Source: Blastocystis sp. Blastoise (lineage: Eukaryota > Protista > Bigyra: Opalinata). Taken from it: a stretch of DNA of 64,000 bases. A program made the translations under genes and the position numbers. A model generated the notes under the pieces. That model ran no database searches. It saw only the letters and a program-made list of their open reading frames with translations, and was not told the origin of the DNA. Below are positions 2,718 through 52,194 of the stretch, in pieces (the first letter of the stretch is position 1; every line of letters begins with the position of its first letter). The stretch is taken from NCBI GenBank assembly GCA_039096225.1, contig JBBPEB010000006.1, positions 1,054,001 through 1,118,000 on the forward strand, given 5' to 3'.

Positions 2718-2784
2718 CTTCATGTCAGGAATTGAACCTGAAAACAATCTATAATGATTGTTTCTCTCCTTCTAGAGCATAAAG
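2718..2784 (-). ncRNA. tRNA-like cloverleaf, copy 1
   Basis: Minus strand reads CTTTATG|CTCT-agaagg-AGAG|AAACAATC-attata-GATTGTTT|TCAGG-ttcaatt-CCTGA|CATGAAG: a 7-bp acceptor stem with one G-U pair and a canonical T-arm. Expression is not shown. Confidence 0.8.
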
Positions 2785-3232
2785 GGAGTTTAAAAATTAT
2801 AATAATAATTAAATATATATATATATATATAATAAGAAGGAATGATGGATGAGGAAGTAGGAAGAAAGAAGAAGGAAGGATGAAGGAAGAAGGAAGAAGT
2901 AGGAAGAAGGATGAAGGAAGAAGAAGGAAGGATGAAGAAGTAGGATGAAGAAAGAAGGATGAGGAAGTAGGAAGAAGAAGGAAGAAGAAGGAAGAAGGAA
3001 GAATGACGGATGAGGAAGTAGGAAGTAGGAATGAAGAATGAAGAATGAAGAATGAAGAATGAAGAATGAAGAATGAGGAAGTAGGAAGGAAGAATGAAGA
3101 ATGAGGAAGAAGGTAGTAGGAAGGATAAGGAAGAAGTAAAATGAAGTAGAAAGAAGGAAGAAAGAAGAAAAAGGAACAAGAAGACTATTAAACCTATATA
3201 CAATAGAAAAAATATAAAAAGATAGCATAAAA

Positions 3233-3263
<31 letters not shown>

Positions 3264-3478
3264 AATAAATAAATAAATATAATAAATATAATAAATATAA
3301 TAAATATAATAAATATAATAAATAAATAAAAAACATAAATAAATAAATAAATAAATAAATATAATAAATAAATAAATATAATAAATAAATAAATAAATAT
3401 AATAAATAAATATATATAAATATAATAAATATAATAAATAAATAAATAAATATAATAAATAAATATATATAAATATAA

Positions 3479-3513
<35 letters not shown>

Positions 3514-4000
3514 AAAACATAAATAATAAATAATAAAAATGAAAACAATAAATAAAATATAAATATATACCTAATAGATTAATCTGAAACCACAGACTAA
3601 AGAAGAACGACATGAAAAAGCGAAGACCACAACACATCAACAACATTTTCTTTCCTATAGAATAAAAATAATTAAAAACTATTGAATAAATGATATATAA
3701 AGACAAAATAAACAAAATAAATAATAAAAATAATAATAACAAAAAGCAATTAGTAAAACAAAAACAGATGTTAAGAAATAAATAATATATTTATATACCT
3801 TACACTAGAAAAACCATATAGCACAACCAGGACCACTTCAAGAAGCTTCTATCACCACAACCAAGACAAATACAAAAGAATCCTATAGAAAAGTGTATTA
3901 TTATAAATAAATAAATTAATATATACAAATAAATATAAAAATAATAACTAAATAACATCAAATTAATTAATAAAACATACCCAGACAATCAATACAAACA
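2785..4000 (-). other. Putative spliced antisense transcription unit, divergent from RepHel and ending at the cloverleaf
   Basis: Minus-strand GT/AG-bounded exons: donor at 3980, exons 3882-3799 and 3654-3571 (84 nt each), and an acceptor (TATATAG) opening a last exon at 3193 that runs through a CT-rich tract to the cloverleaf. Exon 3882-3799 has stops in all three frames. The 5' boundary is approximate. Confidence 0.55.
2835..3560. repeat. GAAG/GAAGAAT simple repeats followed by an (ATAA)n tract
   Basis: Directly visible low-complexity sequence; it produces several hydrophobic minus-strand ORFs in the track. Confidence 0.9.
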
Positions 4001-4238
4001 AATATTTAAAAAATGTAAAAAACTATAGTTTTTGGGTACCCAAAATGTTTTTAACAAAAAATGACCCAATTATCAGCTTAGCATAAGATAATAATGAAAA
4101 TTCGAGGTTATTTATGATTCCTATTAATTTTTAAATATGCATATTTTAAATATTAACCCTATTTTTCAAAAGTTCAATAGTGAATATGTTTTTGTTTTCT
4201 ACATAAAAATACTTATTTTTATTAAATTATTAAATAAG

Positions 4239-7200
4239 ATGCCTAGAAAAGGCAGAATGTCATCAAGGCGGAGGTCCTTGAACAAAAAAAACTACCTTTC
4301 TCAGAGAAGGTCAAGTATGTATTGTATTTATTTTTTTTTATTATTCATATATAGGTTCTTCTACTCAACAGGATACAAGTATGGATGTCATTGATGGTGA
4401 TGGTGCTTATCAATATGGTCTTGAAGGTATATATTTATACATTTCTTTTTGTTTTATTATTTTATATTATCTTAGGCTCTTCTATGTCCTTGGTGTCCTA
4501 TTCTGATGATGGTGTGAGGTTATCGTGTGGTCCTGAAGGTATGTTGGCATTCATTTGGTTTTATTTTTATATTTTTATTTATCTATAGGTTCTTCTGTTG
4601 TTGTGGATTCTGTTACTGGAGCTGTTGATGGTGATGTTAACTCTACTCATGGTCTTCAAGGTATGATGCTAATCATTTATTTTTATTTTTTTATTTATAT
4701 TTATCTATAGGTTCTTCTGTTGTTGTGGATGCTGTTGTTGCTGATGTTGATGCAAGATGTGTTAGTGGTCTTGAAGGTACGTTGCTATTCTTTTAATTTT
4801 TATTTAATTTCCTGTCAATATTTATCTATAGGTTGTTCTAATGCAATGATGGGTGCTAATGGTAATAATAATAAAGGTATATATCATCTATTTTCTTTTA
4901 TTTAACTTATTTTATGTATAGGTTCTTCTACTAATGGTACTGTGTCTGATTGTGATCATCCTTATGAGGTTGAAGGTAAATAGATATATCATATATATAT
5001 ATATTTTATTATTCTTTTAATTCTTTCTTATTTGTTTTTATATAGGTCCTTCAACTCAGTTAGTACATGGTCATTCTTCTATTTCTTCTTCAGAAGGTAT
5101 ATATATATATATATATATATTGTTTTACTTATTATATATTTCTATATAGGTGTGTCTTTTAATTTGGGATCCTGTCACTCTAATGTTGGTCTTGATATGA
5201 TTACTACTAATATATATAAAGGTATATATATATAATTTTTTTTTATTTATTTATTTATACTTATACTATTGTATATATATAGGTGATGGTGTTAATAATT
5301 CTTCAGTCATTGATGCTGTCAACAATTCTTCAATTATTCAAGGTATATATATACTTATATTATATTCTATACTTATATAGGTTCAAATAAAGTTGTGGGT
5401 AAGTATTATTTATTATTTTAGTTTCTTTTTCTTTTGTTTTATTATTTTATTTTCACAGATAATAGCTTTCTGTTATCTGCTTTCTTTTTATTATCTATTT
5501 ATATATTAATTTACTAAGCTTAGCTTTAGCTACTTAGTATTTAAATATTTAATAGAATCCTTTCTTTTTTCATTTTTGTTTTGTTATTTTTTTTTATTTT
5601 AATTTTACTTTAATCGTGTCGATTAACGGGAAGGTGTCGGATATTAAGATAATTTTTGAATTACTTAATATTAAATAGTGTTGAGTATTTTAATATTTGT
5701 ATTTAATTTAATTAATACAACTATTGATTACCTATATGACTCATACTATTGCTGACTATTGTTCGCTTCTAACTCTATATAGTCTAACCGATGTAATACT
5801 ATCAATGATGAGATATCTAAGTGTTAAGATTCTTCACTTACTCACATTGTATATGATATTAACTGGTAGTTAGCTATATGTTTATAGAATGTTGTAACAA
5901 AGCACAATAGCTATAGATGTCCTCTATGAGGTTGAATCATATAGATTGTTTAATAAATTATACAATATTAATTACCTATACTTATTTAATATTAGTTTTC
6001 ATTAATTATAATATTATCTTTCATTACATTATAGTATTGAAGATAATTGTTAATTAATAAAGTTTTTACTTTATATTAATAAATATATCATACTATATGT
6101 ATGTATTATTATATTAATAAAGGTTATATACTTTATATTAATAAATATATCATAGTATAACTATGTATTATTATATTAATAAAGGTTATATACTTTATAT
6201 TAATAAATATATCATAGTATAACTATGTATTATATTATATTAATAAGAGTTATATACTTTATATTAATAAATATATATCATAGTACAACTATGTATTATT
6301 ATATTAATAAAGGTTATACTTTATATTAATAAATATATATCATACTATACTTATGACTTATTATATTAATAAGAATTATATACTTTATATTAATTAATAT
6401 ATATCATACTATACTTATGTATTATATTATATTGATAAAGGTTATACTTTATATTAATTAATATATATCATATTATATTCTATGTATTATTATATTAATA
6501 AAGGTTATATTTTATATTAATTAATATATATCATACTATACTATATGTATGTATTATTATATTAATAAAGGTTATACTTTATATTAATTAATATATCATA
6601 CTATACTTATGTATCATATTATATTGATGAAGGTTATACTTTATATTAATTAATATATATCATACTATACTTATGACTTATATTATATTAATAAATGTTA
6701 TACTTTATATTAATATATATATTATCATACTATATCTATGTATTATATTATATTAATAAAGGTTATACTTTATATTAATTAATAATTACTTCAACAACTA
6801 TAACAATGAAAGTTAATTTATATACTACACAACTAAACTTTATTCTAAACTTAAACATAATATAATTAATATCTAACTATTAATATATATAGGTTCCAAT
6901 AAGGATAAAATAAATAATAATGATTTATCTAAATCATTTGGTTTTAATTTAAAACCTTTAGCTTTGTTTTCGACTTTTAATATACAAAATAATATTCCTT
7001 TACAAAACATTCAAAACAATATTTCAAATAACAATATTGATATTGATATAGATAATAGTTATTCACAAATAAATAATAATAATTCTATGTTAAATAATGG
7101 TTCAAACTTATTCAATCAAATGAATCCAATAAATCAATCAATCAATAACATATCTATTGTTCAAAGTCCAATAAATAATAATAATTCATCTATTCCTATA

Positions 7201-7565
7201 TCAACTACTATTATACAACCTACAGAAAATAATATTTCAGTTTCTAATAATAATAATGATTCTATTAATACTTCTTCACACTCTTTACCTGTTGTTAGTA
7301 CTATTCCAACTGATGTAAATATATCTAACAATAATAATTCTGTAATCATTAATGATAATACGAATCATTCTATAAATAACACTAATACTAATAATAATGA
7401 AACAATAATACAAAGAAATAATAGATCTATTAATTCCATCATGAATAGTTATTTAACTATTCCTGATTTAAGTCCTATTCTTCCTCCTTTAAGTTTGATA
7501 ACAAATATTCCTCATATTAATTTAAATAATGATAATGAATCAGAAATTATAACAACAACACCTAA

Positions 7566-7657
<92 letters not shown>

Positions 7658-10600
7658 ATTTTTCTGATAATGATTCTGATTCTGATTATATTGATCCTTT
7701 TCCTGATATCAATAGTAATACTCAAAACAATGATGAAATACCAGTTGTAAGAACTATTAGAAGACCTATAGCAGATAATAGTATGTTTTTTTATTATTTA
7801 AATATATTTATTTAATACTTCTTTATAGTTGAAGAAGACATAACTATTCATCCTATTATTAATAGAGGAAGAAGAAGAGCTTTAGATATTTGTATGCTAT
7901 TTATATTTTATAATCCTTTATAAATAATTAAATAATAAAATTATTTTTATAGATAATCAACAAAGATTATTATATCCTGGATTACATAATTGTATTGCTT
8001 CTATTCAAAGAAGTATTTATATATATTTAATATTGATTTTATATTATTTTATATAGATTCTCATGGTGATTTTGTATTAAATGAAGCATTGAATACTTAT
8101 AAAGCTAATTATTTAGGTGATTTTAATGTTCATTGTGAATATTGTCATGCTAAACATTTTGAATTAGAGAAAGGAATGAATGATAAGTTTTATACTTGCT
8201 GTGGTAGTGGTAAAGTAGTTCTTCCTGAACTTCCTGATCTTCCTAATACTATTCGTTCTTTATTACAAAGAGATAATCCAGATTCAAGAGAATTTATTAA
8301 TAATATAATTCGATATAATAATTCTGTTGCTTTAGCTTCTTTAGCTGGAAATAATACTTCTGATGATGATTTAAGAAATTCTTCTGGACCTTTACTATTT
8401 AAATGTGGAGGTAATATATATCATACTTTTAAGAGTGCTTTAGATTTTGATGTGAATGATCCTACAAGACATCCTGTATTCAATCAATATTATATGATAG
8501 ATGGAGATGAAGCTACTCATATGAGAAGTATGAATCGATATTTTTGTGATTTAAAACCAAATATTTTACAAATATTAGATAGTACAATAAGAGAATATCA
8601 TCCATTAGCTCAAATATATAATTCACTTCGAGAAAGAGTAGATGAAGTAATAGAAGAGAATAGTCAAATGAATAGAAGTAATATTAATTTATTAATAGAA
8701 TTTAAGAAACAAAGAAGAGAAGTACCTGATATAAGAAGATATAATACTCCTCAAGTAGATGAAGTAGCAGTAATATATCAATATAGAGAAGGAGGAGTAA
8801 TGCCAGAAAGAAGTTATTGTTGTTTTCCTAGAAGTGGTATGGAAATAGTAGCTACTAATAGTAATAATGAACAGAATCGTTATACTTCAGGTCAATATAT
8901 AGTAATGAAGAATACTAATTCATATATAGATTGTATGGTTTATCCAGTTATGTTTCCAACTGGAAGACAAGGTTGGTATCCAGATTTATTATCATTGAAT
9001 CGTTCTAATCAAATAACTATTACGATGTTAGAATATTATAATTATATGCTTCAAATGAAAGATCCACCTTATGATAATTATTTATTAAAATATAAGAAAT
9101 TAACTTTACAATATATTACTGATAATTATATCCGTGTTGAACAAAATAGAATTAATTATATACGAAATAATCAAAATAAATTAAGAGCATCTACTTATCA
9201 GAATATAAATAATATGTTAGAAGAGAGAGGAGACCAAATAAATGAGAATGATAGAAATATAGATAGAATAGGTAAAGCTATTATATTACCTTCTTCTTTT
9301 GTTGGTAGTCCAAGAAATTTACAACAGAAATATATGGATGCTATGAGTGTAGTTCGAGAATATGGTAAACCTGATTTATTTATTACATTTACTTGCAATC
9401 CAGATTGGTTAGAAATAAAGAATAATATTCCAGAAGGTTATACTGTTAATGAATTTCCAGATTTAGTTTCAAGAGTGTTTCATTTAAAGTTGAAACAATT
9501 GCTTTCTGATATAAAGGATAAGAATATATTTGGTACGGTAGAAGCTTTATTATATTCAGTAGAATTCCAAAAGAGAGGTTTACCACATTCTCATATATTA
9601 ATTATTTTAGATACGAATTCTAAATATAGAACAGAAGATGAAGTAGATAGTATAATAAGTGCAGAGATTCCTGATAAAGAATCAACTCCTCTTCTTTATG
9701 AATTAGTTAAGAAACATATGATTCATGGTCCATGTGGTCCTGATTATGATACGAATTGTGTTTGTATTGATAGATCAACAGGTAAATGTAGTAAGAGATT
9801 TCCAAAAGAATATATAGAGCAAACTAATTGTCATTTAAATTCTTATCCTTTATATCAAAGAAGAAATATTCCTGATAGAACTATTACTCTTATTCGTAGT
9901 CATAATACTTATACTATTGATAATCGTTGGGTAGTTCCTTATAATCCTTATTTATTATTGAAATATCAAGCTCATATTAATGTAGAAGTATGTTGTAATA
10001 TTCAAAGTACTAAATATATATATAAATATGCATTAAAAGGAAATGATTCTGTGATAGCTCAATTACGAAGAGTGAATGATAATGGAATAGTAGATGAAAC
10101 TCAAGCTTATTTAGATTGTCGATATGTTTCTCCTCCTGAAGCTTCTTATCGTTTGAATTGTTTTGAAATTACTTATAATTCTGTTTCTATTAATAGATTA
10201 CCTATTCATTTACCTGATGATCCATATATATTATTTCGAGAAGGACACGAAGAAGAAGCATTAAGAAATAGTTTAGAGAAAGGTACTAAATTAACAAAAT
10301 ACTTTGATTTAGAGAAAGAAGTTCAGAATCAAAGAAAGATATATACTTATTATTATATAGAGAAGAAGCATGGTATTCGTAATATGAATAATGTAGAAGA
10401 AGAAAGAGAATTGATTCAAGTTCGTTTAGAAGAGATAAATAGAATAAATAGTTATGAAGTAGATGATGATAATATATCAGAAGAATTATTGAAAATATTA
10501 GATGAGAAATATCCTATTTATGCTTATCATGAAATACCAAAATATTATGTATGGAAATCAAATACAAATACTTGGAATAGACGTCAGAGAGATATAAAAG

Positions 10601-12669
10601 CTTTAGGAAGAATGTATTATGTGAATCCAAAAGATAAGGAACGATATGCTTTGAGATTATTATTATTGAATACGAAAGGAGCTGATAGCTTTGATTCTTT
10701 GAAGATAGTAAAAGGATTGAATAGTAATGAACCTTATAGAACCTTTAGTGAAGCAGCTATAGCAAGAGGATTATTGAATAATGAGAGAGAAGTATTTGAT
10801 TCATTTTCAGAAGCTATTGTTTTTGCTACTCCATGTCAATTGAGACAATTATTTATTACTTATATTTCAGAATCATTATTAACAAATGTGAAAGAGTTTT
10901 GGATTCGATTTAAATCATTTCTTAGTGAGGATTATAAACATTCAATGCATAATAATGAAATAGATTATATAAATACTCCTTTAGCTCAAGATTTAGATTC
11001 ATCAAGTGTTATAGAAGATGATACTAATAGTGTTCTTCAAGATTATGAAATACGTACTTTACAAGATATAAAAGAGATGATGATAAGTATAGGAGTGAAT
11101 TATAATGATTTAGGATTACCTCAAGTAGAAGAACAACATCATTATAATGATTATAATTATAATCCTACATTAGAATTACAAGAAGCTAATAGAGTAATAG
11201 AATTATTAAATGAAGAACAAAGAAATGCATTTGATAGAGTAATTCATTCAATAGAAAGTAGTAGAATAGAAGATAAGTTATGTTTCTTTATAGATGGTCC
11301 AGGTGGAAGTGGAAAGACTTTCTTATATAATAGTTTATTAAGTTATTTACGTGGACATAATAAGAATGTATTACCTGTAGCTTCAACAGGAATTGCTTCT
11401 ACTTTATTACCAGGTGGTAGAACAGCTCATAAACAATTTGGTATTCCTTTGAATGTTGATCCTGATTCTACTTCAAATATAGATTTAGCTAGAGATAGAA
11501 GAAAAGTAGAAGAAATAAGAATAGCTGATTTAATAATATGGGATGAAGCTCCTATGATGAAAGGTGATTGTTTTATGGTAGTACATAGATTATTATGTGA
11601 TATAATGAATACAGAATTAGATATTCCTTTTGGTGGTAAAACAGTAGTATTAGGAGGAGATTTCAGACAATGTTTACCAGTTATAAGAAAAGGAACTCAA
11701 GCTCAGATTGTTAGTTCTTCTATAAAGTTTTGTTCGTTATGGAATTCTATAAAGAATAATGTTATTCATTTATCGAGAAATATGAGAGCTTTAGAAGGAG
11801 CAGATGATTTTAGACAATGGTTATTACAAGTAGGAGATGGTGTTCTTTCTAATAATTATACTATTAGTCATCATTTAGATATAGATTATATTCCTATTCC
11901 TCCTCAATGTATTGTGAATGATGATTTATGTGTTACTGTATTTGGACATCGAATCAATACTTCTCTTGATTCTGATATCAAACGATTAGCTTCTTCTGTT
12001 ATATTAGCTTCTACTAATGATTGTGTTGGTACTTTAAATGATTTCATTGTTGATAATCTTCTTTCTGGAACTACTACTCCTTATATCTCTTCTGATTCTA
12101 TTCTTGATTCTGAAACAGATGATCCAGAATCAAATTATCCTATCGAGTTTATCAATTCTCAAACACCTTCTGGAATGCCTCCTCATATATTAAATTTAAA
12201 AATAGGTTGTATCATTATGCTTTTAAGAAATCTTAATCCTTCTAAAGGATTATGTAATGGTACTAGACTTATAGTTACTCGATTAGGATCAAATAATATT
12301 ACTGCTACTATTTTAAATCCTCCTCCTTCTCTTACTATTGATGAACGTACTGTTATTATTCCAAGAATCATCTGTAATTCAAATCCTGAAGATCTTCCTA
12401 TTATTATATCCAGAAGACAATTTCCTATTCGTTTAGCGTTCGCAATGACTATTAACAAATCTCAAGGACAAACATTTGAAAGAGTTGGTGTTTATTTAGA
12501 TCGTCCTGTCTTCTCTCATGGTCAACTCTATGTTGCTTTCAGTCGTGCTCGATCTTTCAACTCTCTTTTTATTAAGGTAGTTGATAGTGTCTCTCAAGGT
12601 AAGATGATTAGTAGTAGTAATGAAATATTTACTAAGAACGTGGTCTTCAGGTCTACTCTAAACAATTAA
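4239..12669 (+). CDS. Helitron RepHel transposase (HUH Rep plus Pif1-type SF1B helicase), 15 predicted exons, ~2090 aa
   Basis: Exons: 4239-4314, 4355-4426, 4476-4538, 4589-4660, 4711-4776, 4832-4876, 4922-4975, 5046-5096, 5150-5221, 5283-5342, 5381-5398, 6893-7780, 7829-7891, 7953-8012, 8057-12669. All introns are GT-AG and phase 1, and the 6273-nt join is open. Motifs: CxxC...CC zinc knuckle, PDLFITFTCNP, EFQKRGLPHSH (HUH), KYIYKY, GPGGSGKT, WDEAPM, GDFRQ, AMTINKSQGQT, FSHGQLYVAFSR. The core is secure; the N-terminal exon chain is predicted. Confidence 0.93.
6050..6785. repeat. AT-rich minisatellite, ~63-bp unit, ~12 copies, inside the long RepHel intron
   Basis: Recurring TATATTAATAAAGGTTATA(TA)CTTTATATTAATAAATATATCATAGTATAACTATGTATTAT-like unit. 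Confidence 0.9.
7567..7656 (+). repeat. (AGT)30 microsatellite encoding poly-Ser in RepHel exon 12
   Basis: Perfect trinucleotide run in frame with ORF 6964-7815. Confidence 0.95.
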
Positions 12670-12858
12670 ATGTTTTATTTTTTCTTTTTTCTTCTTTTGT
12701 TATATTTGTTTGTTTTTGTTTTATGTTTGTTAATTATTTTTTCTTTTTAATCTATTACTTCTTCACTTTTTATTTGTTTTTAAAATGTTTATAATAAACA
12801 AGGTTGTTTTGTTCAATAAAGTTAAAGAAATAATTTTAAAACCCAACTGCACAACGCA

Positions 12859-12905
12859 GCCGCGGCGCGTCGCCGTTAGGCGGTGCGCCAGCGGCGTTAC
12901 CCTAG
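12859..12905 (+). other. Family-A 3' terminal hairpin and CTAG end
   Basis: GCCGC-GGCGC-GTC-GCC-[GTTA]-GGC-GGT-GCGCC-a-GCGGC, then GTTACC-CTAG|T. Confidence 0.95.
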
Positions 12906-14306
12906 TAGAAGTAAATACAATATTAGATATAATAAATAAGTATAAATGGTTCTAAATTAATCATCGATTCATAATAAAAATGACACAGCATATATATAAT
13001 GATACAAAAAAATATATAAATCATAACACTATAATTAGTAGTACCATAAGAATAATAGTTTCTAGGAATAATACGAATATAAAACATTATCAATTGAAGG
13101 ATAAGATTAATAGAGGATTGATAATTGTTATAGATAATTCTTGAATATTAAATATACTGAAATATAAGTATCATTATTCATAGTATGTATGGACATAGTA
13201 TACATATAATAGAAATCTTTATTCAATTCATTATATCATTTGAAATATTAAATATTTATTTTATACTATTAATGAATTTCTATACTAATAATAGTTTACA
13301 AACAAAATGAATGATCTTCAATAATGCAGACATCATCAATAATTGCATTATAGCAGATATTCAATTGGAATAGTTGAGTGCTCAAATTAGAAATAAGTAT
13401 TAGTAACAACTAATTACTAATAGATAGTTTGAGATAACACTAATAATTGTTAAAAGATCAATAAAGTGGTTAATACAAAATGAGAAAGGTAATATGAAGA
13501 TAACATATTGTTCAAAAAAATATAGAGAATAGTCTCATTTGTATATCTAATAAAGTATTAATTACTTTATAGGAATCCATATAATGATATAATAATAACC
13601 CATTATAAATAAAGCATAAATATGCATTTAAATATGTTGAATACTTATTACGACCAGTAAAGTAATTTGTATATCAAATATAACTAATGGCATAAATTAT
13701 TATAACATAAATATTAATAATTTTATATTGTAATGCTACATAATATGTAGTAATATTAAAATAATACTTTATATAACAATATAAAAACAAATGTAGTAGT
13801 ACAAATAAAATATCATGTACTATATGAATTGCTTATAATGCAATACATAATAGGAACTTAGTGTATGCTTCATAACGATTAAAATCGTATCATATATTAT
13901 TTATATATATGTCCCATGATATTTCTTTTTATATTTTCTGATATATTAAGTTAAAGTTCTAGAAAAATTTATATTAAAAATTATTATATAACATGTAATA
14001 GCAAGATTTATAATGCTAATAATAATAAGAATCTGCATAATTATTTCATTAAAAAATGAAGAGAAACCATTAAATAATCTGGAATTTTAAATTAGATTAG
14101 TATGCTTTCATTATTAATTATATTAAATAATATTTGCTCTCCTTCAATAAGAGATAATAAACTATGATAGTATTATATTCGTGTTTTATAAAACTCGTTA
14201 TCTTTGCATATCTTATTTTATAATAACTCTTCAATGGAAATAATATTATATTAAATAATGATTGCAATAATTACTTTATACTTCATATTCTCATATATTA
14301 TTAATA

Positions 14307-17300: not shown

Positions 17301-18181
17301 AAATAAAATTAGAAAACAGTACAACCATATACTAATAAATACTCAATAACAACATCTTTAATGAGTAGTATAAATAGAAGATCTAAATAAATTAATTGAT
17401 AGCCATTTAAAATCAAAACAATAATAAATGAGATGATAAAACTAATAAAGAATAAATTAATAATTAATACAGAAATAATACAATCAATAATTATAAAAAA
17501 TTTCAACGATAGACAAAAATAGCTACTAAATCAAAAAAATATTATGATTAAGAAGAAACAATCATAAATAAAAAAATACAAAAAAATCAAACGTGATAAA
17601 GTAAAAGACTAATAAATAAAGACTAAATAATCAAATCTAAAGAATAAAAATAACAAAAATAAATAAATAGCAATTAGTAAAACTGACAAAACATCTACAT
17701 CTAACCACTGAAGAAGAAGAAAATCAAAATAAGGAAAACGTTCATGAAGTCTAAATCACAGCTTGAGTTTCATACATCATTTTGGATACAGAATTAACAC
17801 AACATCAATAACAAATAATTATGAACATCTGGACAAACTCTGAATTAATTTTTTAAGCAGTAGAACAATACTAACTCATTCTACTACAGAAGTTACTAAT
17901 ATTTATCAATAATTTTGACATACTATTCTAGGATAGCAATAGCAATTAGTTGATAACCATCATAGATTCATAGACATCATTGTTAACGTTAAGAAAATCA
18001 ACAGTGACAATAGATAACTTAAAAAATTAATATTGAAAAAAAACAAGTTTTAAATTTTTTAAGAAAGTCAGTTTAAATAATTGTGAATAATTTAAATTAT
18101 TGTTTGAAGTTTTGTTTTTCCCCGTTTATCAATAATAATTGTATATGAAAATAAGAAAAGATCACTCATATTTATTTATGT
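14307..18181 (+). mobile_element. Probable 5' non-coding region of another Helitron-related element (family-B related); 5' boundary tentative
   Basis: 15477-16127 is the reverse-complement homolog of 24804-25452 inside the family-B non-autonomous copy. The region has internal direct repeats ~179 bp apart (14981/15160), a cloverleaf at 17151, and a candidate start A|TCCTTAATTTAG at 14307. Confidence 0.55.
17151..17218 (-). ncRNA. tRNA-like cloverleaf, copy 2 (divergent)
   Basis: Minus strand reads ATCTATG|CTC-agtatgg-GAG|cAGTAATT-ttattatg-AATTACTa|TCAGG-ttcaaac-CCTGA|TATAGAT. GCTCAGTATGGGAGC closely resembles a tRNA D-arm. Confidence 0.8.
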
Positions 18182-35760: not shown

Positions 35761-35829
35761 TCTTATTATTTATTATATATATATATGCATTCTTATTATT
35801 CTTTTTATTCATTCTTATTACTCATTCTA

Positions 35830-36714: not shown

Positions 36715-36745
<31 letters not shown>

Positions 36746-41789: not shown

Positions 41790-41820
<31 letters not shown>

Positions 41821-43400
41821 AAGAAGAAGAAGACAGAGAAGAATATATGGAGCAAGATGAGAATAAAAAGAGGGAGAAGGAGAGGAGCAAAATATGAATA
41901 AGAAGGAGAATAGGAAAGATAGGAAGGATAAGAAGGACAAGAAGGACAAGAAGGACAAGAAGGACAAGAAGGACAAGAAGGACAAGAAGGACAAGAAGGA
42001 CAGGAAGGATATGAAGGATAAGAAGGATAAGAAGGACAAAGAGGAGGAGGAGAAGAAGAAAAATTATAGGAAGAAGAATAAGAAGGAAAAAGAAAAGTAG
42101 GAGAAAAAAGAGGAAAGAGAAAGAGAAGGAAAAGAAGAACAATTATAAGAAGAAGAACAAGAAGGAAAAAAAGAGGAGAAGAAGAAAAATTATAAGAAGA
42201 AGGATAAGAAGGACAAAGAGGATGAGGAGAAGAAGGAGAAGAAGAAGAAGAAGGATAAGAAAGAGAAGAAGAACAAGAAGAAGGAGAAAGAAAAGTAAAA
42301 GTATAAATAGAAGGAGAATAAAGAAAAGGAGATAGAGATGGAGACAAAAAAGTAGACGTAGAAGAATAAAAAAAATAAATAAAAATATAGTTGTAGAAAC
42401 AGAAGTATAAATAGAAGTATAAGAATAGGAAAATGAGAATCATTAGAAGAAGAAAAATGAGAAGAAAAATGAGAAGAAAAATGAGAAGAAGAAGAAGAAT
42501 GAGAAATTGAATATAGAAAAAAAGAAGAAGATGAAAGAGAAAGAGAAAGAGAAAGATAATAGCAAGGAGAAGTATAAGTATAAGAAGAATGAGAAGAATA
42601 AAGTAGTAGAAGCAAAAGCACGAGTAGGAGTAGGAGTAAAAGCAGAACTACAAGTAGATATATAAGCAGAAATATAAGTTGAATAATAAGAAGTATTATT
42701 AGTAGTAGTGTAGCTGTAGAAATAGAAGAAAAAATAAAAGAGTAAGTAGTAGTAGAAGAAATATGAGTAGAAGTACAAGTAGGAATAGAAGAATGAAGGA
42801 AAGAAGGAAAGAAGGAAGAAGCTAAAGGAGAAGAATTGCAAGGAGAATAAGGAAAAAAAAAAGGAACAAAATGGAATGGAAATGATAACGAGAGAAAAAA
42901 GAAAAGAAGAAGAAAAACAATAAGAATAAGAAGATGTAGAAGGATAATAAAAGAAGAAAAAACAATAATAATGAGAACAAGAAGTAAATCTATAATGAGA
43001 AGGAGAAGTGGAAAGGAAGTATAGTAGAGAAGAAGAATAATGAAAAGTAAAATAAGATGTAAAGGTGAAAGAAGCATAAGAAGAAGTAAAGTAGAAGAAA
43101 AAGAAGAATCATGAAAGGATAAGAAGAATGAAGAATAATGAAAAGGATAGGGATAAGAAGTATAATGAGAAGGACGAAGAAGTAATAGTAGAATTTGTGA
43201 AGAGGTAACAGTAAAGAAAAGAAAAATTAATACTATACGTAAAAAAAGAAAAACTAGAGTAAGATGTACAGTAGAATTAAGAATGAAAAATTAACAATAA
43301 AGAATGAAGAATTAAGATTAAGAATTAAGAATGAAGATTAAGAATTAAGAATGAAGAATAAAGAATAAAAATGAAGAATGAAGAATGAAGAATGAATAGT
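36580..43400. repeat. ~6.8-kb purine-rich (GAA/AGTAGA/GACAAGAAG) low-complexity tract with internal duplications
   Basis: The plus strand is dominated by A/G. (AGTAGA)n lies at ~37807-37950, and blocks recur at ~37160/37467/41700 and ~37625/38215. Confidence 0.9.
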
Positions 43401-43667
43401 AGATTAAGAAAGGAATGTGCTAGAGAGAAGCGACTGTAGATCTGTCAAATAATTAAAATAATTAAAAGAATAAAAATAACTTCCATAATAGACTAATATA
43501 ATATGTAATAAACTTGCTGTTTTGTGAGAATTATTAAATAATACTAAAAGTCTAAAAAATATATAATATTATAAAAATAGAATAATAATAATATTATAAA
43601 GATAAAAAATAACATATATATTAATAGTCAGTGTAAACAAGCTAAATATATTATTAAATACATATAT

Positions 43668-44979
43668 ACCTTAATAAAGACTTGAATCATTGCAATCTGA
43701 TTCCCAGGTTGTATTTGAATACGCTAAGATTCTATAGATAAATACGTAGAATAAATTAATAAAATTAAATAGAGTATATATATATTAAAAGATAAACAAG
43801 ATAGAAAAATAGAAAGCAATTCAATTGTAAAAAAAAATATAAATGAAAATAAAATAAATATGTTATAGAGATAATATGAATGTATTGATAATATAGAAAT
43901 AAAATAGATATAACAAAGAATAAACAAAATGAGAAAATGTAAAATAATTATATACCTTAGATTCATTAGTATTGTTTACCAAGACCTTTAGAGTTGATTT
44001 GAAACCATATGAAGCTTTTTCTGAATATCTAAACAATAAGTAACCAATTGATCAACTAATTACTATATAAAATTAAATATTTGAAGAGAGTAAACTATAT
44101 AACATATATATTTATGACTAGAAAACATACATAGATTCATTTTATATGTCTATAATGACAATATATGAAATAAAACAATATTTGAGTTTCAAGAAATAAT
44201 CATTCTGAGGATGGGAACAGGGATAAAACAGCCTAAATAGCGGAATCAACCTCTTTGATAAAAACTGTTTTGTGATTCAGTGAACAAGTTTTAAAAATAA
44301 TTTCTAGAGATTCAAAGTATGGGATAAAAAGTCTTCTTTGATATGGTCCCTATTCTTAAATTTTTTTAGAATTACTTCAATCCGTGAAAGTCTTATTCAG
44401 CATCAGCTTAAATGAACTGCTGAAAGAAGTATATTTTTTAAATATTAGTATATGGATTATTTAATTATTTAGAAGGTTATTTTATACTTTATATTTATAT
44501 TATATTTTTATATGTATATTATTATAGATTAGGAATGAAATGAGCACAGATAATGGACCAATTGGTGATTCGTTTATTCTGGTATATGTTAATTTTATCT
44601 AATATTATTCATATAGGCTGAAGAGACTAGTTTGAAGAGCCTGTAAACGTTAGAAATTCATATTGGAAGAAGTTCCATTTGTCAACATTTCTTCACTGGA
44701 AGTCTTGATCAAATATGTTTAAGTGGTATGTTATTTTATATATATTTATCTATCTTATAATTATATAGTGAAGAGTTTGAATCAAAACAAAATGAATTAC
44801 ATTTTTCAGAAGATGTTGATATATTGGATGTTTTTTAAATTTATTCAACCTTGTTATTGTCTTTTAAGTTTATAACTATATTATTTATAATGTATATTAT
44901 CTACATATATATAGAAATGGTGAATGATTATCTATTTGAGTTCTTTTCTTTTCTTATTCAGCACCATCATTGAGTACTT

Positions 44980-45017
<38 letters not shown>

Positions 45018-45696
45018 TAATTATTATATCTTCTATAGATACAAGCAGAAAATAAATGATGATTATGTATCACAATTCTAAAAATAATATAAATCAGTTA
45101 AAAGTATATATTTATTTTATTTTATTTATTGTTAGCTAAATATAATAATTTATAATTGTTTAATATATGTATATTATATATGTATATATTATTTATTATC
45201 GTTTTTATTCTATTATATATATATATATAATATTATTCTTCATTTATTATTATATATAGATGAGATAATAATTAATTCGACTATCTCCTCATTATACACA
45301 CATTGTATATATATATCTACATATATTCTAATAATTTTTGTATATATTATTGTATTAATATATATATATATATATATAATATTATTGATTATACTATATG
45401 AACACTATCTTCTTATCAATACAATTAATATTTATATATATTTTTATCAATATATGCATATTTCCTATTAACTTTTTTTATAATCTATTTAAAAATTTTG
45501 TATATAACATTTTATTACTATTATATATTCACTATTTGTTCTTATAATATATTATTTAATATGTTATATATATATATATATATAGTACTATCATATTTAT
45601 TATAAGTCTATTTCTCCTTAATCGATATTACTACATAATTTATATAATAAGATGTATATATATTCTTTTCTTTTCTGTTATTCTTTTTATTCTTTT

Positions 45697-45732
<36 letters not shown>

Positions 45733-47149
45733 ATTACTTTTTTTATTTATTTATTATTTATATATAAATAGTTATTGTGGTATACAAGATTAGTGGCTAT
45801 TATGTATCTATATTATTCCGTATAAATTTTATTAACATATACATATATTTATATTTATATATATATATATGTATAGTATTCTATTCTGAGTTATGTACAT
45901 CATTTTTTATTATATATAAATAAGGTATATAGTTTTATATATATTTTTATATTAAATTATAATCCCCTCTAGATAATTTATTTTATTGTTTTATAATTCA
46001 TATAATTATTATTATTATTAATATTTATTATATATTCATCCTATATGTATAAATATATTTAATAACTATCACATTATATGTGTTTATTTTTATTTATTTA
46101 GTTTTATAAGTTATATATATATATATATATACTTAGAGATATATGTATATAAATTATTATTATGTATTATTTATTTTTATTATATTATTACCATAATATG
46201 TCTATTTGCTTACATATGTATATATAGTTGTTTTATTTCATATTCAAACGTTGCTTTAGTGAACAAATATATATATTTATATATGATATTATAGAATTAT
46301 TTTGTATTCATTATATATATATATATATTATGCATTAATTTTTACATGTTTGTTATATTTAATATATATATATATGTAATTATTTTATATCCATATATAT
46401 ACATATATATATATAGATATCATTGATATTAATATTCAAAGTATATATATATAAACATATATAGACTTATATATAGTATTTTATATGTATTCATATTATA
46501 ATATATTATGTATAGTTAAATAGTTATATGTAAGTCATCCTTTTATGTTTCTTATGAATTTATATAAATATAGTTCTTTAATTCTGAATATGTATATATT
46601 ATTATATATATCATCTTATTCTATATATATTATGTATTTTTTATTTAATATAAAAGATAATATTTTGTGTATTTAATATTTTATATCAATTATTCTTCTA
46701 TTTAACTCTTTTATATCATTTATCTTTCTACAACTTTATTATTTATTATCTTTTTTAAATACCATTTACCATATAGTTTATTATACGTACATATAGTAAT
46801 AGTCATAGCGCTTCTTTATGTATGTTTTATTCAATTATGTTAGTATATGTATTGTGGTATATATGTATATTAATTGTCGTTTATTTATATATCGTTTTGT
46901 ATTTATTTTGAAATAAAGATTATATACATATAGTTATTATGTATATATATATATATATATATATATAACATTATTGATGTGAGCAATTTATTTTTCGTAA
47001 TATATATTAAGTCTACTTCTCTTATATATAAATATATCTAATAATTTACTATATGTTTTCCAACTTTATATATATATATATGTATTTACTATTTTCTATT
47101 ATTATTATATATATATTGCTAATGAAATTAAGATATTGTCCAGGTAAGA

Positions 47150-47180
<31 letters not shown>

Positions 47181-47593
47181 TTGTTTTTATTCTTATAAGT
47201 ATTATGTTCTTATATTATATTTAGATATGTTTTTTTCTTTTTGTTATTTTTTTTTTAATTATACTGTAAATATAAATACATAACTTTCTACTCTGCTTAT
47301 TACTTCTTTTATAGTATATATCTATATTTCTTTCTATAAATATGTCATTCATCTATATGCTATTATATATATTTTAGAATCCAAGCTCCTAATAGAAACT
47401 ACTATAATTAATGATGATACAACCTTTTTGGTATATACATATTTATACTATTATTAGTTTTTTATAACTTATTATGTAATATTTTATTAATATTTTAACC
47501 AAATTTATTTATATATTATTATTCATTTTCTTTATTCTCTAACTATTTATAGAACATATCCTTAGCTTGTCTCCTATGTATATATGGCTTTAA

Positions 47594-47624
<31 letters not shown>

Positions 47625-47731
47625 TCTCTTTTTATATCTCTGATACATTATACTTATCACATATTAATAGTTATCTTTTATTATAAGGTTTTTATTATAT
47701 AGATTATTATTAATAGGTATAATGGAGTATT

Positions 47732-47763
<32 letters not shown>

Positions 47764-47838
47764 TATAATTATATAATTATATTTTGGGTTTTTGTCTGTT
47801 AAACATATATACATGGTTATATTCAAATAATTAATATT
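43668..47838. other. Divergent pair of spliced, apparently non-coding or decayed units around ~44200-44400
   Basis: Minus-strand GT/AG-bounded exons near 43669-43723 and 43955-44027 point into the purine tract. Plus-strand GT/AG-bounded exons from ~44470 contain stop codons and lead towards the cloverleaf at 47839. Confidence 0.4.
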
Positions 47839-47906
47839 CCTTAGACTGAATATGGTTAGTAGCAATCATTAATAGATTGTTATCAGGTTCAATTCCTGAT
47901 CTAGGG
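47839..47906 (+). ncRNA. tRNA-like cloverleaf, copy 6 (divergent)
   Basis: CCTTAGA|CTGA-atatgg-TTAG|TAGCAATC-attaata-GATTGTTA|TCAGG-ttcaatt-CCTGA|TCTAGGG; fully paired with three G-U pairs. Confidence 0.82.
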
Positions 47907-49426
47907 TCATATATTATATTTTTTATAAAAAAATTTAAATATTTTTCTCTATAGATATTCTCATTCATTAGAACCAGTATGAAAGGGTATATTGAGTTTC
48001 ATGTAATTAAATAAACTCTATACATTGCTAGTCGCTCTTCTATATTGTTTTTAAATACCTTTACTTAAAACCAAACACATTCACAATTACATTCACCTAT
48101 AATTTTCTATTCAATAATTTATTTTGTTAATCATTCTTCTAATCAATTCTACACACAAATAAAAAATAAATATTCATCAATAACACCTTGAAGTCTATAA
48201 ACACGCAATGCATTCTTTGTCTATACTCTTAAAAAGCATTTCTACTGTTTATATTAACATGATTGACACTTAAAGTCATTTGTAACATTTATAAACTACT
48301 TTCAAAACTTTTAAAGAACCTTGACAAATCTACATTACCTAGAAAACTATTATAATTAACTTTAGTTTATATAGGTCATAATTAAATTCAAATTACTAAT
48401 AGAAAATTAAAATAACGACATTCTAACTCAATATATCAACTAGAAAAATCAATTGTGTTTGTAACTTCTCTAAAATTGAATTAATTAGTGAAATATGTAT
48501 TTAAATTAATGTTGAATTCAAATTTAAACACACACAAACTCACCTTTTCTGACAGTTCTACACATTTAGGCAATCTAGTGACTATCACATAATCGACTAA
48601 TTTTTGTTGTCTTCATCAAGCCTAACTATTTCCTCATGACCATAACCATTAATTTCATTTTATTCAACACTCTATAAATAATTAATCAATTTACTAATTT
48701 TATTTACATAATTACATACTCCATCAACAACAAGAAGACATCAGGAGTAAGAATAACTGTTTAAAGTATTTAAATAAAATAATAAATAATTAAAAGTAGA
48801 AATATTTAGATTTCAATAAAATTTAATAAGTTAATTTATAGTGAAGTTTCAATAATCATATAAAAAATATGATTAATTTAGTTTTTGTATGTTTTAAGTA
48901 TATATCTATCTATATATAGGACCTAGGAGTATAGTAGAGTACCTTGCGGTCTCCATTGGCAGATTGATCTGTTGTGCTATGTTCTCTTTCTCTATGGTGA
49001 GCTTCTCTAAGTGGTACATAGTGGTTGAGTTAGATGGTCAGCTATTGTATTGTTGTTTAAATTGGATGATGTGACGTCACCATACAAAACTATTTCTTTA
49101 GGCTTTCTCACTGAGTAGCAATTGGTGGGTTATATTAACTGAGCGTGGTTTGAAACTTTAAAAAAAAAATTACTTAATTGGATAAACAGATTGGTCTTAA
49201 ATTGCAGAGAAGCATGGATCTCTTCACTTAATCACTACCTATAACACTCAAATGCTTATAATTAGAGTTAATTTGTATTAGTCATATTCAGATTCTAGAT
49301 GTATATATTTTCTGCATTTATTTTCTTTATAATTATAATTATAATATTATATAGATATTTATATAGGTTATTATATAGTTATTAAGCCTAGTTCTTGTTC
49401 TTCTTGTCACTAACTTCTTGTTTTTT

Positions 49427-49471
<45 letters not shown>

Positions 49472-49639
49472 GACTTTTTTTATTTTGCTTATATATTGTT
49501 ATTTTCTTTATTATTAAGAATAAATTTTGTTCATATTTATTATTAGTTTTATTCAATATATTTATTGACTTTGTTCTATTCTTCTCTTTTTTTATTCTTA
49601 TATATATATATATATATATAGAGGCAAAACTTTTATATA

Positions 49640-51910
49640 TTTGTTTTTCTTCATTCTTATTTTCTCCTCTTGTCCTCTATTGGCCTTGTTCTCCTCTTCT
49701 CTCTTCCATTCATCTACTCTCTAGTTTTTACTCATTTTTATTCTTATACTCTTATGTTATATAGAACAGTTATTGTTTTTCTTAATATTACTTTATAGTA
49801 TGTTTTATTTCATGTTCTTCTATTCTATATTCTAGTTTTTCCTTCACTTTCTTCTTTCCTCCATAATTATTACTGGTTCTTCTTCTCCTATCATTACATA
49901 CTCTCTTCATTTCAATCTCTTTATCATGATCGTCTTCTTTTTCATTTCCTTCAACTCTTCCTTTTCCTACTCTTCTTCTTTATTTCCTTCTATATTATTA
50001 CTTCTTTTTCTCATCTTCTTCCAATTATACTTTCCTTATTCTTTATTCCTTTTGATTCTCATCTACACATTGTTTCTATTTTCCTTCTTCTTCTATATAT
50101 CCTTATTTTTTGTCTCCTTGTTCATTCCTTTTTCGTTCTTTTTCATCTATTTATCCTTCTTCTATTTATTTTAATTCTGAATCACCTTCTCTCTATCTCT
50201 TTCTGTTTCTTCTTCTTCTATTTGATCTTATTTTTCTTCTTCTCTTCTTCTTCTCTTTCTATACATTCTTCTCTATATATTGTTTTTCTCTCTATCTTCT
50301 TCATCTGTATTTTCTCTTCTATTTATCCTTATTCTTATTCTACATTTTCTCCATATCATTCTCCTCCTATATCTTATGTACCTCCTTTATCTTCTTCTTC
50401 TTCGTCTATGTCTTCTATTTATTCTTCTTCACCTTTTTTCTTCTTCTATATATATATTCTACTTATTCTTCTCTATCCTTGTCTATATATCTTTCTTCTA
50501 TATTTTCTGCTTCTACTTCTTCTTCTATATCTTCTATTTATCATTATTTTCCAACATATTTTTCTATGGTACTTCTTCTTTTCTCTTCCTTCTCCTTCTT
50601 TTCTATATCTTCTGTTTATCTTATTCTTCGTCTATATATAATTATTCTCCTTATTCTTCTTCTTTATATATATATTCTTCTTTTTCGATATATTCTTTTT
50701 TTTCTTTTCGTTCTTTTCCTTGTTCTCCTTCTCAATCTCCTTCTCTTCATTGATATCCTTCTTCTTCTTCTTCTTCTATTCATCTTTTTCTCCTTCTTCT
50801 TCTCCTTCTCCTTCTCCTTCTTCTATTCATATTTCTTCTTCTTCTTCTTCATTTAATCCTTTTCTCCTCCTCTGTTTTCTTCTTCTTCTATTCATCTTCA
50901 TCTCCTTCTTCTTCTCCTTCTTCTTCTATTCATCATCATCTTCTTCTTCTCTTTCTCATTCTACTTCTTCTTCTTCTTCTCTTTCTCTTTCATCATCATC
51001 TTCTTCTTCTTCTTCTTCTTCTTCTTCTATTCATCATCTTCTTCTTCTTCTCTTTCTCTTTCTTCTTCTTCTTCTAGTCATCATCATCTTCTTCTTCTTC
51101 TATTCATCTTTCTTCTTGTTCTTCATTTAATCCTTCTTCTTCTTCATTTAATGCTTCTTCTCCTCCTCTGTCTTCTTCTTCTATTTATCCTTCTTCTCTT
51201 TCTATTCTCCTATATATCCTTTATCTCCTGTTTTTCCTTCTCAATCTCCTTCTCTATATCTCTTTCTTTTTCTTCTATTTATCCTTTTTCCACTTTTTCT
51301 ATATCTTTCTATATCTTTATATCATTCCTCGCCTTCTTCTTCAGCATCTTCTTTTTAAATCTTATAATTATTTTCTCTTTTCTGTTTTTCTCATTTTATT
51401 TTTTTCATCTATTTTTCTATATCTTATTATTTTCAATATTTATTATACAGAATATTATTTATATTTAATGTTTTTCACTTTCATACTCTTTTTCTAATAT
51501 TATATTTTATCATTCTCCGATATCTTCACTTGTTCTTCTTATGTGTATTCTCCTCATATTTTTATTTCTTTTCTAATAGATTTTCCTTTATAGTTCTTCT
51601 AACTCTTCTCTACCTTCTTTCTTCTTTTTCTCTTCTACATGATTTTCTATTCTCCATCTTTCTTTTTTCTTTTTTATCTTCTTATCTTATTATCTATATG
51701 TGCTTCCTCTTCCTCTAATTCTTCTTTATACATATAAATTCTTTTCGCTATTTATCATTCTAATTATTTCCTTATTCTCATTTAATTAATATTATTCTTC
51801 TTCTTAATTTATTTTCTCTTATTCTTCTTATTCTTGTCTTTAATTTTTTTCTATACACAGTTCCTGTCTTTTATTATCTTTTATATCTATATATCTATTT
51901 TCTCTTCATA
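49640..51910. repeat. Pyrimidine-rich (TTC/TCT) low-complexity tract
   Basis: The plus strand is dominated by C/T; the tract lies ~220 bp 5' of cloverleaf copy 7. Confidence 0.9.
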
Positions 51911-52054
51911 TTTTAATTATTTCTATCTGTTATACTTATTAATCTAATATTTTTTTTATTAATAAAAAGATTTTTCAATTTTTATTTCTTATTTATACTT
52001 ATTATTTCATTAATTTATATACTACTTATTTATATATTTATTTTATATATTTTA

Positions 52055-52087
<33 letters not shown>

Positions 52088-52128
52088 ATATTATGTATTT
52101 TAATATTATTATCATTATTATTATTACT

Positions 52129-52194
52129 CTTATGCTCTAGAAGGTGAGAGGCTATCATAATTAGATAGCAATCAGGTTCAACTCCTGACATAAG
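52129..52194 (+). ncRNA. tRNA-like cloverleaf, copy 7
   Basis: CTTATG|CTCT-agaaggtg-AGAG|GCTATC-ataatta-GATAGC|aa|TCAGG-ttcaact-CCTGA|CATAAG. Confidence 0.78.

What the first reader, a model, noticed from the sequence alone, without database searches (positions are those of the whole stretch)
2718..52194. Helitron-associated tRNA-mimic: seven covarying, anticodon-less cloverleaves
Seen: a 66-70 nt four-arm structure at 2718-2784(-), 17151-17218(-), 23476-23543(-), 29055-29120(-), 31072-31141(+), 47839-47906(+) and 52129-52194(+). All copies keep the T-arm TCAGG-TTCAANY-CCTGA and a D-loop containing GG. Stems change in sequence but stay paired: acceptor CTTTATG/CATGAAG, ATCTATG/TATAGAT, TCTTATA/TATAAGA, CCTTAGA/TCTAGGG; D stem CTCT/AGAG versus CTGA/TTAG; third arm AAACAATC/GATTGTTT, TTACAATC/GATTGTAA, AGTAATT/AATTACT, GCTATC/GATAGC. 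About eight non-Watson-Crick stem positions are G-U on this strand and would be A-C on the other, which identifies the folding strand. It differs from a tRNA in three ways: no 8-9 connector and little or no variable loop (a near-perfect four-way junction), a third arm of 6-9 bp, and a third loop that varies in length (5-8 nt) and sequence. Known: the 7+5 bp acceptor/T stack and the D-loop GG/T-loop elbow are what RNase P, RNase Z and the CCA-adding enzyme recognise, and GGTTCRANNCC is the Pol III B box. Inference: this is a selected, non-decoding tRNA mimic carried by rolling-circle transposons. I do not know of such a Helitron component.
Basis: partly seen in the sequence, partly recalled or inferred. 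Interest (0 to 1): 0.95.

Follow-up and report, generated by a model that had tools for sequence, protein, structure and literature searches.

The report
Transposon-borne linker-less tRNA look-alike
Several unrelated DNA transposons of a tortoise-gut Blastocystis carry a 68-base tRNA look-alike, built like the vertebrate mascRNA and kept intact by selection even in gene-less copies, which most likely lets the cell's tRNA-cutting enzymes cut RNA that runs through the transposon; I found nothing like it described for DNA transposons, but its function is untested.

Summary
The window (Blastocystis sp. Blastoise) holds seven 67-68 nt cloverleaves, with 247 exact T-arm copies genome-wide. Stems covary (12 of 24 pairs change on both sides, 0/500 shuffles). 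There is no fixed anticodon and no Rfam match. 'Helitron component' is only partly right: four copies lie antisense in family-A Helitrons, one antisense in a family-B Helitron, and two (47839, 52128) lie sense in a Mutator-type element. Between non-autonomous sub-lineages that are 70% identical, the cloverleaf is 60-67/68 identical, so it is selected and most likely acts in cis. The architecture matches mascRNA/menRNA (7+5 bp stack, D-loop GG, no linkers), but there is no homology and no triple helix. Best reading (0.5, inferred): an RNase P/Z cutting signal that ends transcripts before the element's terminal region. Rivals: Pol III gene or TFIIIC barrier (0.25), second-strand primer (0.08). 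No expression data were obtained. The scan has noted this same element on other DNA of this genome.

The parts
2718..2784 (-). Cloverleaf in autonomous family-A Helitron, 1.94 kb inside the 5' end, antisense, at the end of a spliced-looking non-coding unit
17151..17218 (-). Cloverleaf in the 5' part of a family-B Helitron, about 2.9 kb inside its 5' end, antisense
   Evidence: copy C20:44224-50802, 98% identical, lies 3.8 kb before a RepHel-B match on the same strand
23476..23543 (-). Cloverleaf in non-autonomous family-A Helitron NA1, antisense, about 200 bp from the 3' end
29054..29121 (-). Cloverleaf in non-autonomous family-A Helitron NA2, antisense
31073..31140 (+). Cloverleaf in non-autonomous family-A Helitron NA3 (element on -), antisense; 18 genome copies share its model score and sequence
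47839..47906 (+). Cloverleaf I of the pair in a Mutator-type element, sense to the transposase
52128..52195 (+). Cloverleaf II of the pair in the Mutator-type element, after a 2.5 kb pyrimidine-rich stretch
778..12905 (+). Autonomous family-A Helitron: A|TC start, GC hairpin and CTAG|T end
7990..12669 (+). RepHel-A main reading frame (Helitron_like_N, PIF1); micro-exons upstream from about 4240
3799..3882 (-). Putative antisense exon (AG/GT-flanked, stop codons in all three frames) upstream of cloverleaf 2718
   Evidence: splicing inferred from sequence only
3571..3654 (-). Second putative antisense exon
2785..3194 (-). Pyrimidine-rich putative terminal exon that runs into cloverleaf 2718
14300..20950 (+). 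5' part of a family-B Helitron (terminal region, cloverleaf, micro-exon gene), cut off by nested insertions; start approximate
21047..23749 (+). Non-autonomous family-A Helitron NA1
26627..29307 (+). Non-autonomous family-A Helitron NA2
30381..33572 (-). Non-autonomous family-A Helitron NA3
34510..53380 (+). Mutator-type element carrying the cloverleaf pair; limits approximate (weak 40-nt inverted match of the ends, homology edge)
35360..35728 (+). N-terminal fragment of the Mutator transposase, with one in-frame stop
   Evidence: relatives lie about 2 kb before PF10551 matches; no Pfam hit of its own
53721..58601 (+). RepHel-B main reading frame (39% identical to RepHel-A); its 3' hairpin ends at about 58844
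61575..64000 (+). Non-autonomous family-A Helitron NA4; its cloverleaf begins at the window's last base

Best explanation
A cis-acting, mascRNA-like RNA-processing signal shared by the transposons of this genome. RNA made through the element on the cloverleaf strand folds into a linker-less tRNA shape (7-bp acceptor on a 5-bp T stem, D-loop GG against the T loop). Such RNA would be a divergent spliced non-coding transcript from the RepHel promoter region, cargo transcripts in the Mutator, or read-in from flanking host DNA in gene-less copies. RNase P would cut at its 5' edge and RNase Z at its 3' edge. The transcript is thereby ended before it crosses the element's terminal region, and a ~70-nt by-product is released. 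Shown: structure, covariation, strand, fixed positions, purifying selection in non-autonomous lineages, presence in three transposon families. Inferred: that it acts in cis, that it is transcribed, that RNase P/Z cut it, and that the benefit is protection of the ends from read-through or silencing.
For: The architecture equals that of crystal-solved mascRNA/menRNA, which lack the eight linker residues, have a longer anticodon-equivalent stem, keep the TSL plus GG elbow and are cut by RNase P then Z (PMC11693755). The invariant parts here are the T arm and D-loop GG; the third loop is free. Narrow conservation island: 60-67/68 identical between gene-less sub-lineages that are 69-71% identical over the next 1 kb, above every other 68-nt window, p 4e-4 to 1e-9; the two differences between NA3 and L019 are one compensatory pair. 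Gene-less copies can only be selected for what helps themselves (inference), which points to action in cis. Ten Mutator-borne copies give the same model score although their surroundings, where aligned, are about 82-91% identical. Upstream DNA is T-skewed on the cloverleaf strand in all seven (+0.11 to +0.45), like introns on their sense strand (+0.2 to +0.5) and unlike tRNA-gene flanks (median about 0). GT-AG-flanked non-coding exons lead into 2718. In the autonomous Helitrons and the Mutator the cloverleaf faces the nearest element end.
Against: There is no U-rich/A-rich triple-helix module upstream, so a stable MALAT1-like product is not expected. Non-autonomous family-B Helitrons spread without it. 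In short family-A copies only 200-700 bp of element lie upstream, so the transcript must start in host DNA. A perfect B box and a T4 run within 12 nt in five of seven copies fit Pol III as well. Short-tract gene conversion could add to the conservation island.
Confidence: 0.5

Rival explanations
1. An internal-promoter (type 2) Pol III unit: TFIIIC binds the B box, the element is transcribed into a small tRNA-like RNA, and the cis benefit is a chromatin barrier or open chromatin at the transposon, as for yeast tRNA-gene barriers (my knowledge).
For: The B box GGTTCAANYCC is invariant; T-R at the A-box start and GG at its end are kept; a T4 run follows within 3-12 nt in 5 of 7 copies against 22% of random positions within 15 nt. 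It would work in any position and orientation, hence in Helitrons and Mutators.
Against: The A-box lacks the G that all seven distinct nuclear tRNA genes examined have at its third place. T4 lies 1-5 nt away in 23 of 24 real tRNA genes but 25 and 68 nt away in two copies, including the youngest family. A DNA-level barrier would not need compensated acceptor and third stems. A diffusible RNA would not be selected in gene-less copies (inference).
Confidence: 0.25
2. A priming device for Helitron second-strand synthesis: RNA of minus polarity is cut by RNase P/Z and its 3'-OH primes conversion of the displaced plus-strand circle to double-stranded DNA.
For: Only the plus strand is transposed and circles must become double-stranded (PMC5876387). 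The cloverleaf is minus-polarity in every Helitron copy placed and is kept in minimal family-A elements.
Against: It also appears conserved in a cut-and-paste Mutator and is absent from mobile family-B non-autonomous elements. Reconstructed Helraiser transposes in human cells, and no such part is described for it as far as I know.
Confidence: 0.08
3. A DNA-level structure (single-stranded cloverleaf or cruciform) bound by transposase or a host protein.
For: G-T wobble is also tolerated in DNA; both strands can fold; a cis role is simple to explain.
Against: The wobble asymmetry names the minus strand, not the displaced plus strand. The conserved loops are exactly the tRNA elbow. Two RepHels 39% identical and a Mutator transposase are unlikely to share one site.
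Confidence: 0.07
4. A decaying captured tRNA, a tRNA-derived SINE, or an unusual decoding tRNA.
For: tRNA model score 19.4 bits for one copy; ARAGORN calls one copy Ile; origin from a tRNA is likely.
Against: Compensatory change and a conservation island exclude neutral decay. Fixed positions inside elements, with no tail or target duplication seen, exclude independent SINE insertions. The third loop is 6-8 nt and variable. The genome has ordinary tRNA genes at 60-75 bits.
Confidence: 0.04

Closest known systems
mascRNA / menRNA (MALAT1 and NEAT1 3' tRNA-like structures; PMC11693755, PMC12941219)
   Same: Linker-less four-way junction, 7-bp acceptor, 17-nt T arm, D-loop GG, long third stem without anticodon, T arm the most conserved part; here too it sits at the end of apparently non-coding T-rich units.
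   Different: No Rfam mascRNA-menRNA match, 67-68 nt rather than 57-58, 4-bp D stem, AU-rich, no upstream triple helix, hundreds of copies in transposons of a stramenopile rather than vertebrate lncRNA loci; processing not shown.
Canonical Helitrons (HLE1; PMC11417382, PMC5876387)
   Same: Family A: RepHel with Helitron_like_N and PIF1, A|TC start, hairpin plus CTAG|T end.
   Different: The HELIANO survey paper has no mention of tRNA and my searches found no tRNA-like cis element for Helitrons; family B ends in hairpin plus CTTG.
tRNA genes and tRNA-derived SINE heads (Pol III type 2 promoters)
   Same: B box, D-loop GG, cloverleaf.
   Different: No 8-9 connector or variable loop, weak A box, no fixed anticodon, no tail or target duplication seen, fixed place inside DNA transposons.
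Other tRNA-like processing marks: plant mitochondrial t-elements, gammaherpesvirus TMERs, plant-virus 3' tRNA-like structures (from my knowledge, not tested here)
   Same: A tRNA shape used to recruit RNase P/Z or the CCA-adding enzyme rather than to decode.
   Different: None is known to me in nuclear DNA transposons; viral structures are mostly pseudoknotted and aminoacylated.
Pack-MULE cargo
   Same: A Mutator-type element carries a piece that looks captured: the pair spacing (4.1-4.3 kb) and a 78-nt remnant of the Helitron-A internal repeat (72%) suggest capture from a Helitron relative.
   Different: The captured cloverleaves appear to stay under selection instead of decaying.

Membership tests
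mascRNA/menRNA | Match to the Rfam mascRNA-menRNA model | tested here: not met
   No hit in the window at E<=5 or on two single copies at E<=10
mascRNA/menRNA | Linker-less cloverleaf with 7-bp acceptor, T arm and D-loop GG | tested here: met
   against the description in PMC11693755
mascRNA/menRNA | Upstream U-rich/A-rich triple helix ending at the cut site | tested here: not met
   No A-rich tract at the 5' edge; longest A run in 150 nt is 2-6 and T runs 3-6
mascRNA/menRNA | Lies at the 3' end of a Pol II non-coding transcript | tested here: inconclusive
   Splice-like signals and strand skew only; no reads
mascRNA/menRNA | Cleavage by RNase P and RNase Z, CCA addition | not testable with these tools
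   needs RNA ends or in vitro assay
tRNA | Rfam RF00005 score above 29 bits | tested here: not met
   19.4 bits for 17151, none listed for 52128; none among the genome's 63 matches
tRNA | 7-nt anticodon loop with fixed anticodon; 8-9 connector and variable loop | tested here: not met
Pol III type 2 gene / SINE head | B box | tested here: met
   invariant
Pol III type 2 gene / SINE head | A box TRGYNNARNNGG | tested here: not met
   third-position G absent in register in all seven
Pol III type 2 gene / SINE head | T4 terminator directly downstream | tested here: inconclusive
   3-12 nt in five copies, 25 and 68 nt in two; tRNA genes 1-5 nt in 23 of 24
tRNA-derived SINE | Independent insertions with tail and target duplication | tested here: not met
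   fixed positions inside larger elements
Helitron HLE1 (carrier, family A) | RepHel; 5' TC; 3' hairpin plus CTRR; insertion between A and T | tested here: met
   definition from PMC11417382
Helitron HLE1 (carrier, family B) | 3' hairpin plus CTRR | tested here: not met
   RepHel present and hairpin at a fixed place, but the end reads CTTG; it is a Helitron by its protein, subgroup not settled
Mutator/MULE (carrier of 47839 and 52128) | MULE transposase domain in the element family | tested here: met
   sister copies have PF10551 12-17 kb upstream of the cloverleaves on the same strand; the window's fragment matches 2 kb before those domains
Mutator/MULE (carrier of 47839 and 52128) | Long terminal inverted repeats and 9-bp target duplication in this copy | tested here: inconclusive
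   only a 40-nt, 80% inverted match of the presumed ends; no duplication identified

The most novel reading that the evidence does not exclude
The cloverleaf is the primer-making part of a complementary-strand origin for these Helitrons: host RNase P/Z cut a minus-polarity RNA to give the 3'-OH that turns the displaced single-stranded circle into the double-stranded intermediate, and Mutators merely captured it.
Probability: 0.08. Interest if true: 0.93.

Novelty: new variant of a known kind. Interest (0 to 1): 0.72.

Why it matters
A 2025 survey says MALAT1 and NEAT1 are unlike any other known lncRNAs in using the tRNA-processing machinery, and their tRNA-like structures are reported from vertebrates (PMC12941219). 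A linker-less mimic of the same build in a stramenopile, without detectable homology, would be a convergent origin of that trick and, as far as my searches reach, its first case in DNA transposons. Selection in gene-less copies says the structure helps the copy that carries it, which implies an unrecognised cis need of DNA transposons, such as stopping read-through over their ends in a compact genome. The element is short and has natural compensatory variants, so RNase P/Z assays and a reporter test are straightforward. The limits: one strain of one genus, and no RNA evidence yet.

Tried and rejected
Rfam over the window and over single copies: no family. ARAGORN's Ile call for 52126: rejected, no connector and the loop is not conserved. 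Assigning 47839/52128 to RepHel-B's element: rejected, they travel with Mutator domains. Assigning 17151 to the Mutator fragment at 35360: rejected, the 98% identical C20 copy lies before RepHel-B. RepHel searches listed no other Blastocystis isolate among the best 120 hits, so no cross-species test was possible. A flank-versus-core test between different carriers was blunted by AT-rich flanks. G-variant T-loop search gave 22 places I could not classify. Literature searches for tRNA-like parts of Helitrons or DNA transposons found none; the genome paper has no mention of tRNA; no paper on Blastocystis PRORP. Spliced models were searched exon by exon, by reference; the joined step was left out.
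Full report
Setting. The window is C14:1054001-1118000 of a 33.3 Mb, 34-contig genome, 23% G+C. Its RepHel proteins are 100% identical to proteins of Blastocystis sp. Blastoise; the likely genome paper covers tortoise and human isolates and has no mention of tRNA in its text (PMC12129017). The window is a nest of transposons.

Seven 67-68 nt sequences fold into four arms: a 7-bp acceptor, a 3-4 bp D stem with a loop ending in GG, a 6-8 bp third stem with a variable loop, and an invariant T arm, with 0-2 unpaired bases at the junction. The T arm occurs 7 times against 0.01 expected and 247 times exactly in the genome (about 400 with two mismatches). On 11 distinct sequences, 12 of 24 pairs change on both sides, no shuffle of 500 reaches that, and slid structures fall to about 40% paired; RNAalifold finds the same fold unaided. 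The strand follows from 8 G-U and no A-C pairs and from the tRNA-type loops, not from folding energy. It is not a tRNA: 19.4 bits at best against a cut-off of 29, while the genome has ordinary tRNA genes at 60-75 bits. No Rfam family matches.

What carries it. Family-A Helitron: the autonomous copy 778-12905 and gene-less copies 21047-23749, 26627-29307, 33572-30381 and 61575 onward share the 5' 1.4 kb; the four complete ones have A|TC and hairpin-CTAG|T ends. The cloverleaf is antisense in each, a few hundred bases beyond a block of 488-bp repeats. Its nearness to the 3' end in gene-less copies comes from deletion of everything after it. On contigs C1-C13, 40 of 98 T-arms lie 213-725 bp behind a family-A 3' end, 17 at 4.2-5.1 kb and 6 at 9.4-10.6 kb, all antisense; none lies sense within 1 kb. 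The 4.3-kb pairs are longer gene-less elements with two repeat-plus-cloverleaf blocks. Family-B Helitron (RepHel 39% identical): 14300-20950 is the 5' part of an autonomous copy, since a 98% identical stretch on C20 lies just before RepHel-B. It has the same layout: terminal region, antisense cloverleaf, micro-exon gene. Its roughly 3-kb gene-less relatives share only the terminal 2.2 kb, and the one in the window has no cloverleaf. Mutator: 44000-52623 has many sister copies; seven have an open PF10551 domain about 12 and 16 kb upstream of the two cloverleaves on the same strand, and the window's own transposase fragment at 35360-35728 matches just before those domains. So 47839 and 52128 are Mutator cargo, sense to its transposase, near its right end. 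The pair spacing and a 78-nt remnant of the Helitron-A repeat suggest capture from a Helitron relative (inference).

It is selected, most likely in cis. Gene-less family-A sub-lineages are 69-71% identical over the kilobase beside the cloverleaf but 60-67 of 68 identical inside it, more than any other 68-nt window; the next bins fall to 0.62-0.87. The only two differences between NA3 and L019 are a T-A to A-T pair. Ten Mutator-borne copies have one and the same model score while their surroundings, where aligned, are about 82-91% identical. A gene-less transposon can be selected only for what raises its own copying or survival, so a diffusible small RNA is a poor explanation and an effect on the carrying copy is the natural one (inference; short-tract conversion is a caveat).

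How it most likely works. The build is that of mascRNA and menRNA, which lack the eight linker residues, have a longer third stem, keep the T arm and GG elbow, and are cut out by RNase P and RNase Z (PMC11693755). The DNA upstream is T-skewed on the cloverleaf strand in all seven copies, like sense-strand introns and unlike the flanks of tRNA genes. In the autonomous family-A element, two GT-AG-flanked exons of about 84 nt, the first closed in all frames, and a pyrimidine-rich terminal stretch run away from the RepHel start into the cloverleaf; a similar unit precedes 52128. I therefore read it as a cutting signal that ends RNA before it crosses the terminal region (0.5). No triple helix precedes it, so the upstream RNA is probably not stabilised. 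A Pol III unit or TFIIIC barrier is the main rival (0.25): the B box is perfect and T runs are often near, but the A box lacks its G, the terminator is loose and missing for 68 nt in the youngest family, and a DNA barrier would not need compensated stems. Priming of the second strand of Helitron circles (PMC5876387) fits the polarity but not the Mutator copies or family B (0.08). A DNA-level structure (0.07) and decay, SINE or decoding tRNA (0.04) fit worse; the remainder is for mechanisms not listed.

Membership and novelty. It works like a mascRNA by architecture but is not a member of that family: no model match, no triple helix, another lineage and setting. It is not a tRNA or SINE. Searches found no tRNA-like part described for Helitrons or other DNA transposons, and MALAT1 and NEAT1 are described as unlike any other known lncRNAs in this respect (PMC12941219). 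No homolog turned up in the metagenome and viral hits examined. I rate it a new variant of a known kind, interest 0.72: real, selected, unexpected in this setting and easy to test, but known from one strain and without RNA evidence. Other windows of this scan noted the same element in this genome; those notes gave me the Mutator lead and the 'linker-less' wording, and they are not independent support.

Limits. Spliced models were examined exon by exon and not joined.

Noticed in passing
L180:330-396 (metagenome contig Ga0114973_10055090): A linker-less cloverleaf with the same T stem (45 bits with my model) sits between tRNA-Leu and tRNA-Glu in an AT-rich tRNA array next to what looks like a DNA methyltransferase gene; the context looks giant-virus-like (my impression). 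ARAGORN does not call it. Probably convergent.
   Followed up: partly
L182:5687-5765, L112:1142-1220, L139:354-417, L178:2851-2913: Non-canonical tRNA-like elements with the same T arm in viral and metagenome contigs, 30-42 bits; not examined further.
   Followed up: no
L062-L179 (many metagenome contigs): A recurrent repeat that begins TGTTAC and contains a T-arm-like hairpin in its first 40 bases, tandemly arrayed in L103; looks like the end of a host mobile element.
   Followed up: no
window 58806-58846 (+) and 20950-20990 (-): Family-B Helitron 3' hairpin ends in CTTG rather than CTRR; about 100 copies in the genome, at a fixed distance after RepHel-B.
   Followed up: partly
window 4240-7900 (+) and 18300-20900 (+): RepHel N-termini built from many 40-90 nt micro-exons with low-complexity Ser/Asn-rich products; no Pfam domain.
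   Followed up: partly
window 36500-43400: About 7 kb purine-rich (AG) tract inside the Mutator, with splice-like signals on the minus strand at 43600-44000 but no cloverleaf at its end.
   Followed up: partly
window 1400-2400, 21680-23100, 27260-28700, 31500-32950, 62200-63700: 488-bp internal repeats (2-3 copies, about 72-79% alike) in the family-A 5' region; candidates for transposase binding sites.
   Followed up: no
L006:845-880: A third type of GC hairpin followed by CTAG, probably the 3' end of another Helitron family.
   Followed up: no
G000:C9 and C12 (L031, L040, L056): Contigs of 33 kb and 19 kb with dense AT-rich tRNA arrays, probably the mitochondrion-related organelle genome assembled twice.
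   Followed up: no
window 12900-14310: Belongs to a different repeat with three near-identical copies elsewhere; type not determined.
   Followed up: no
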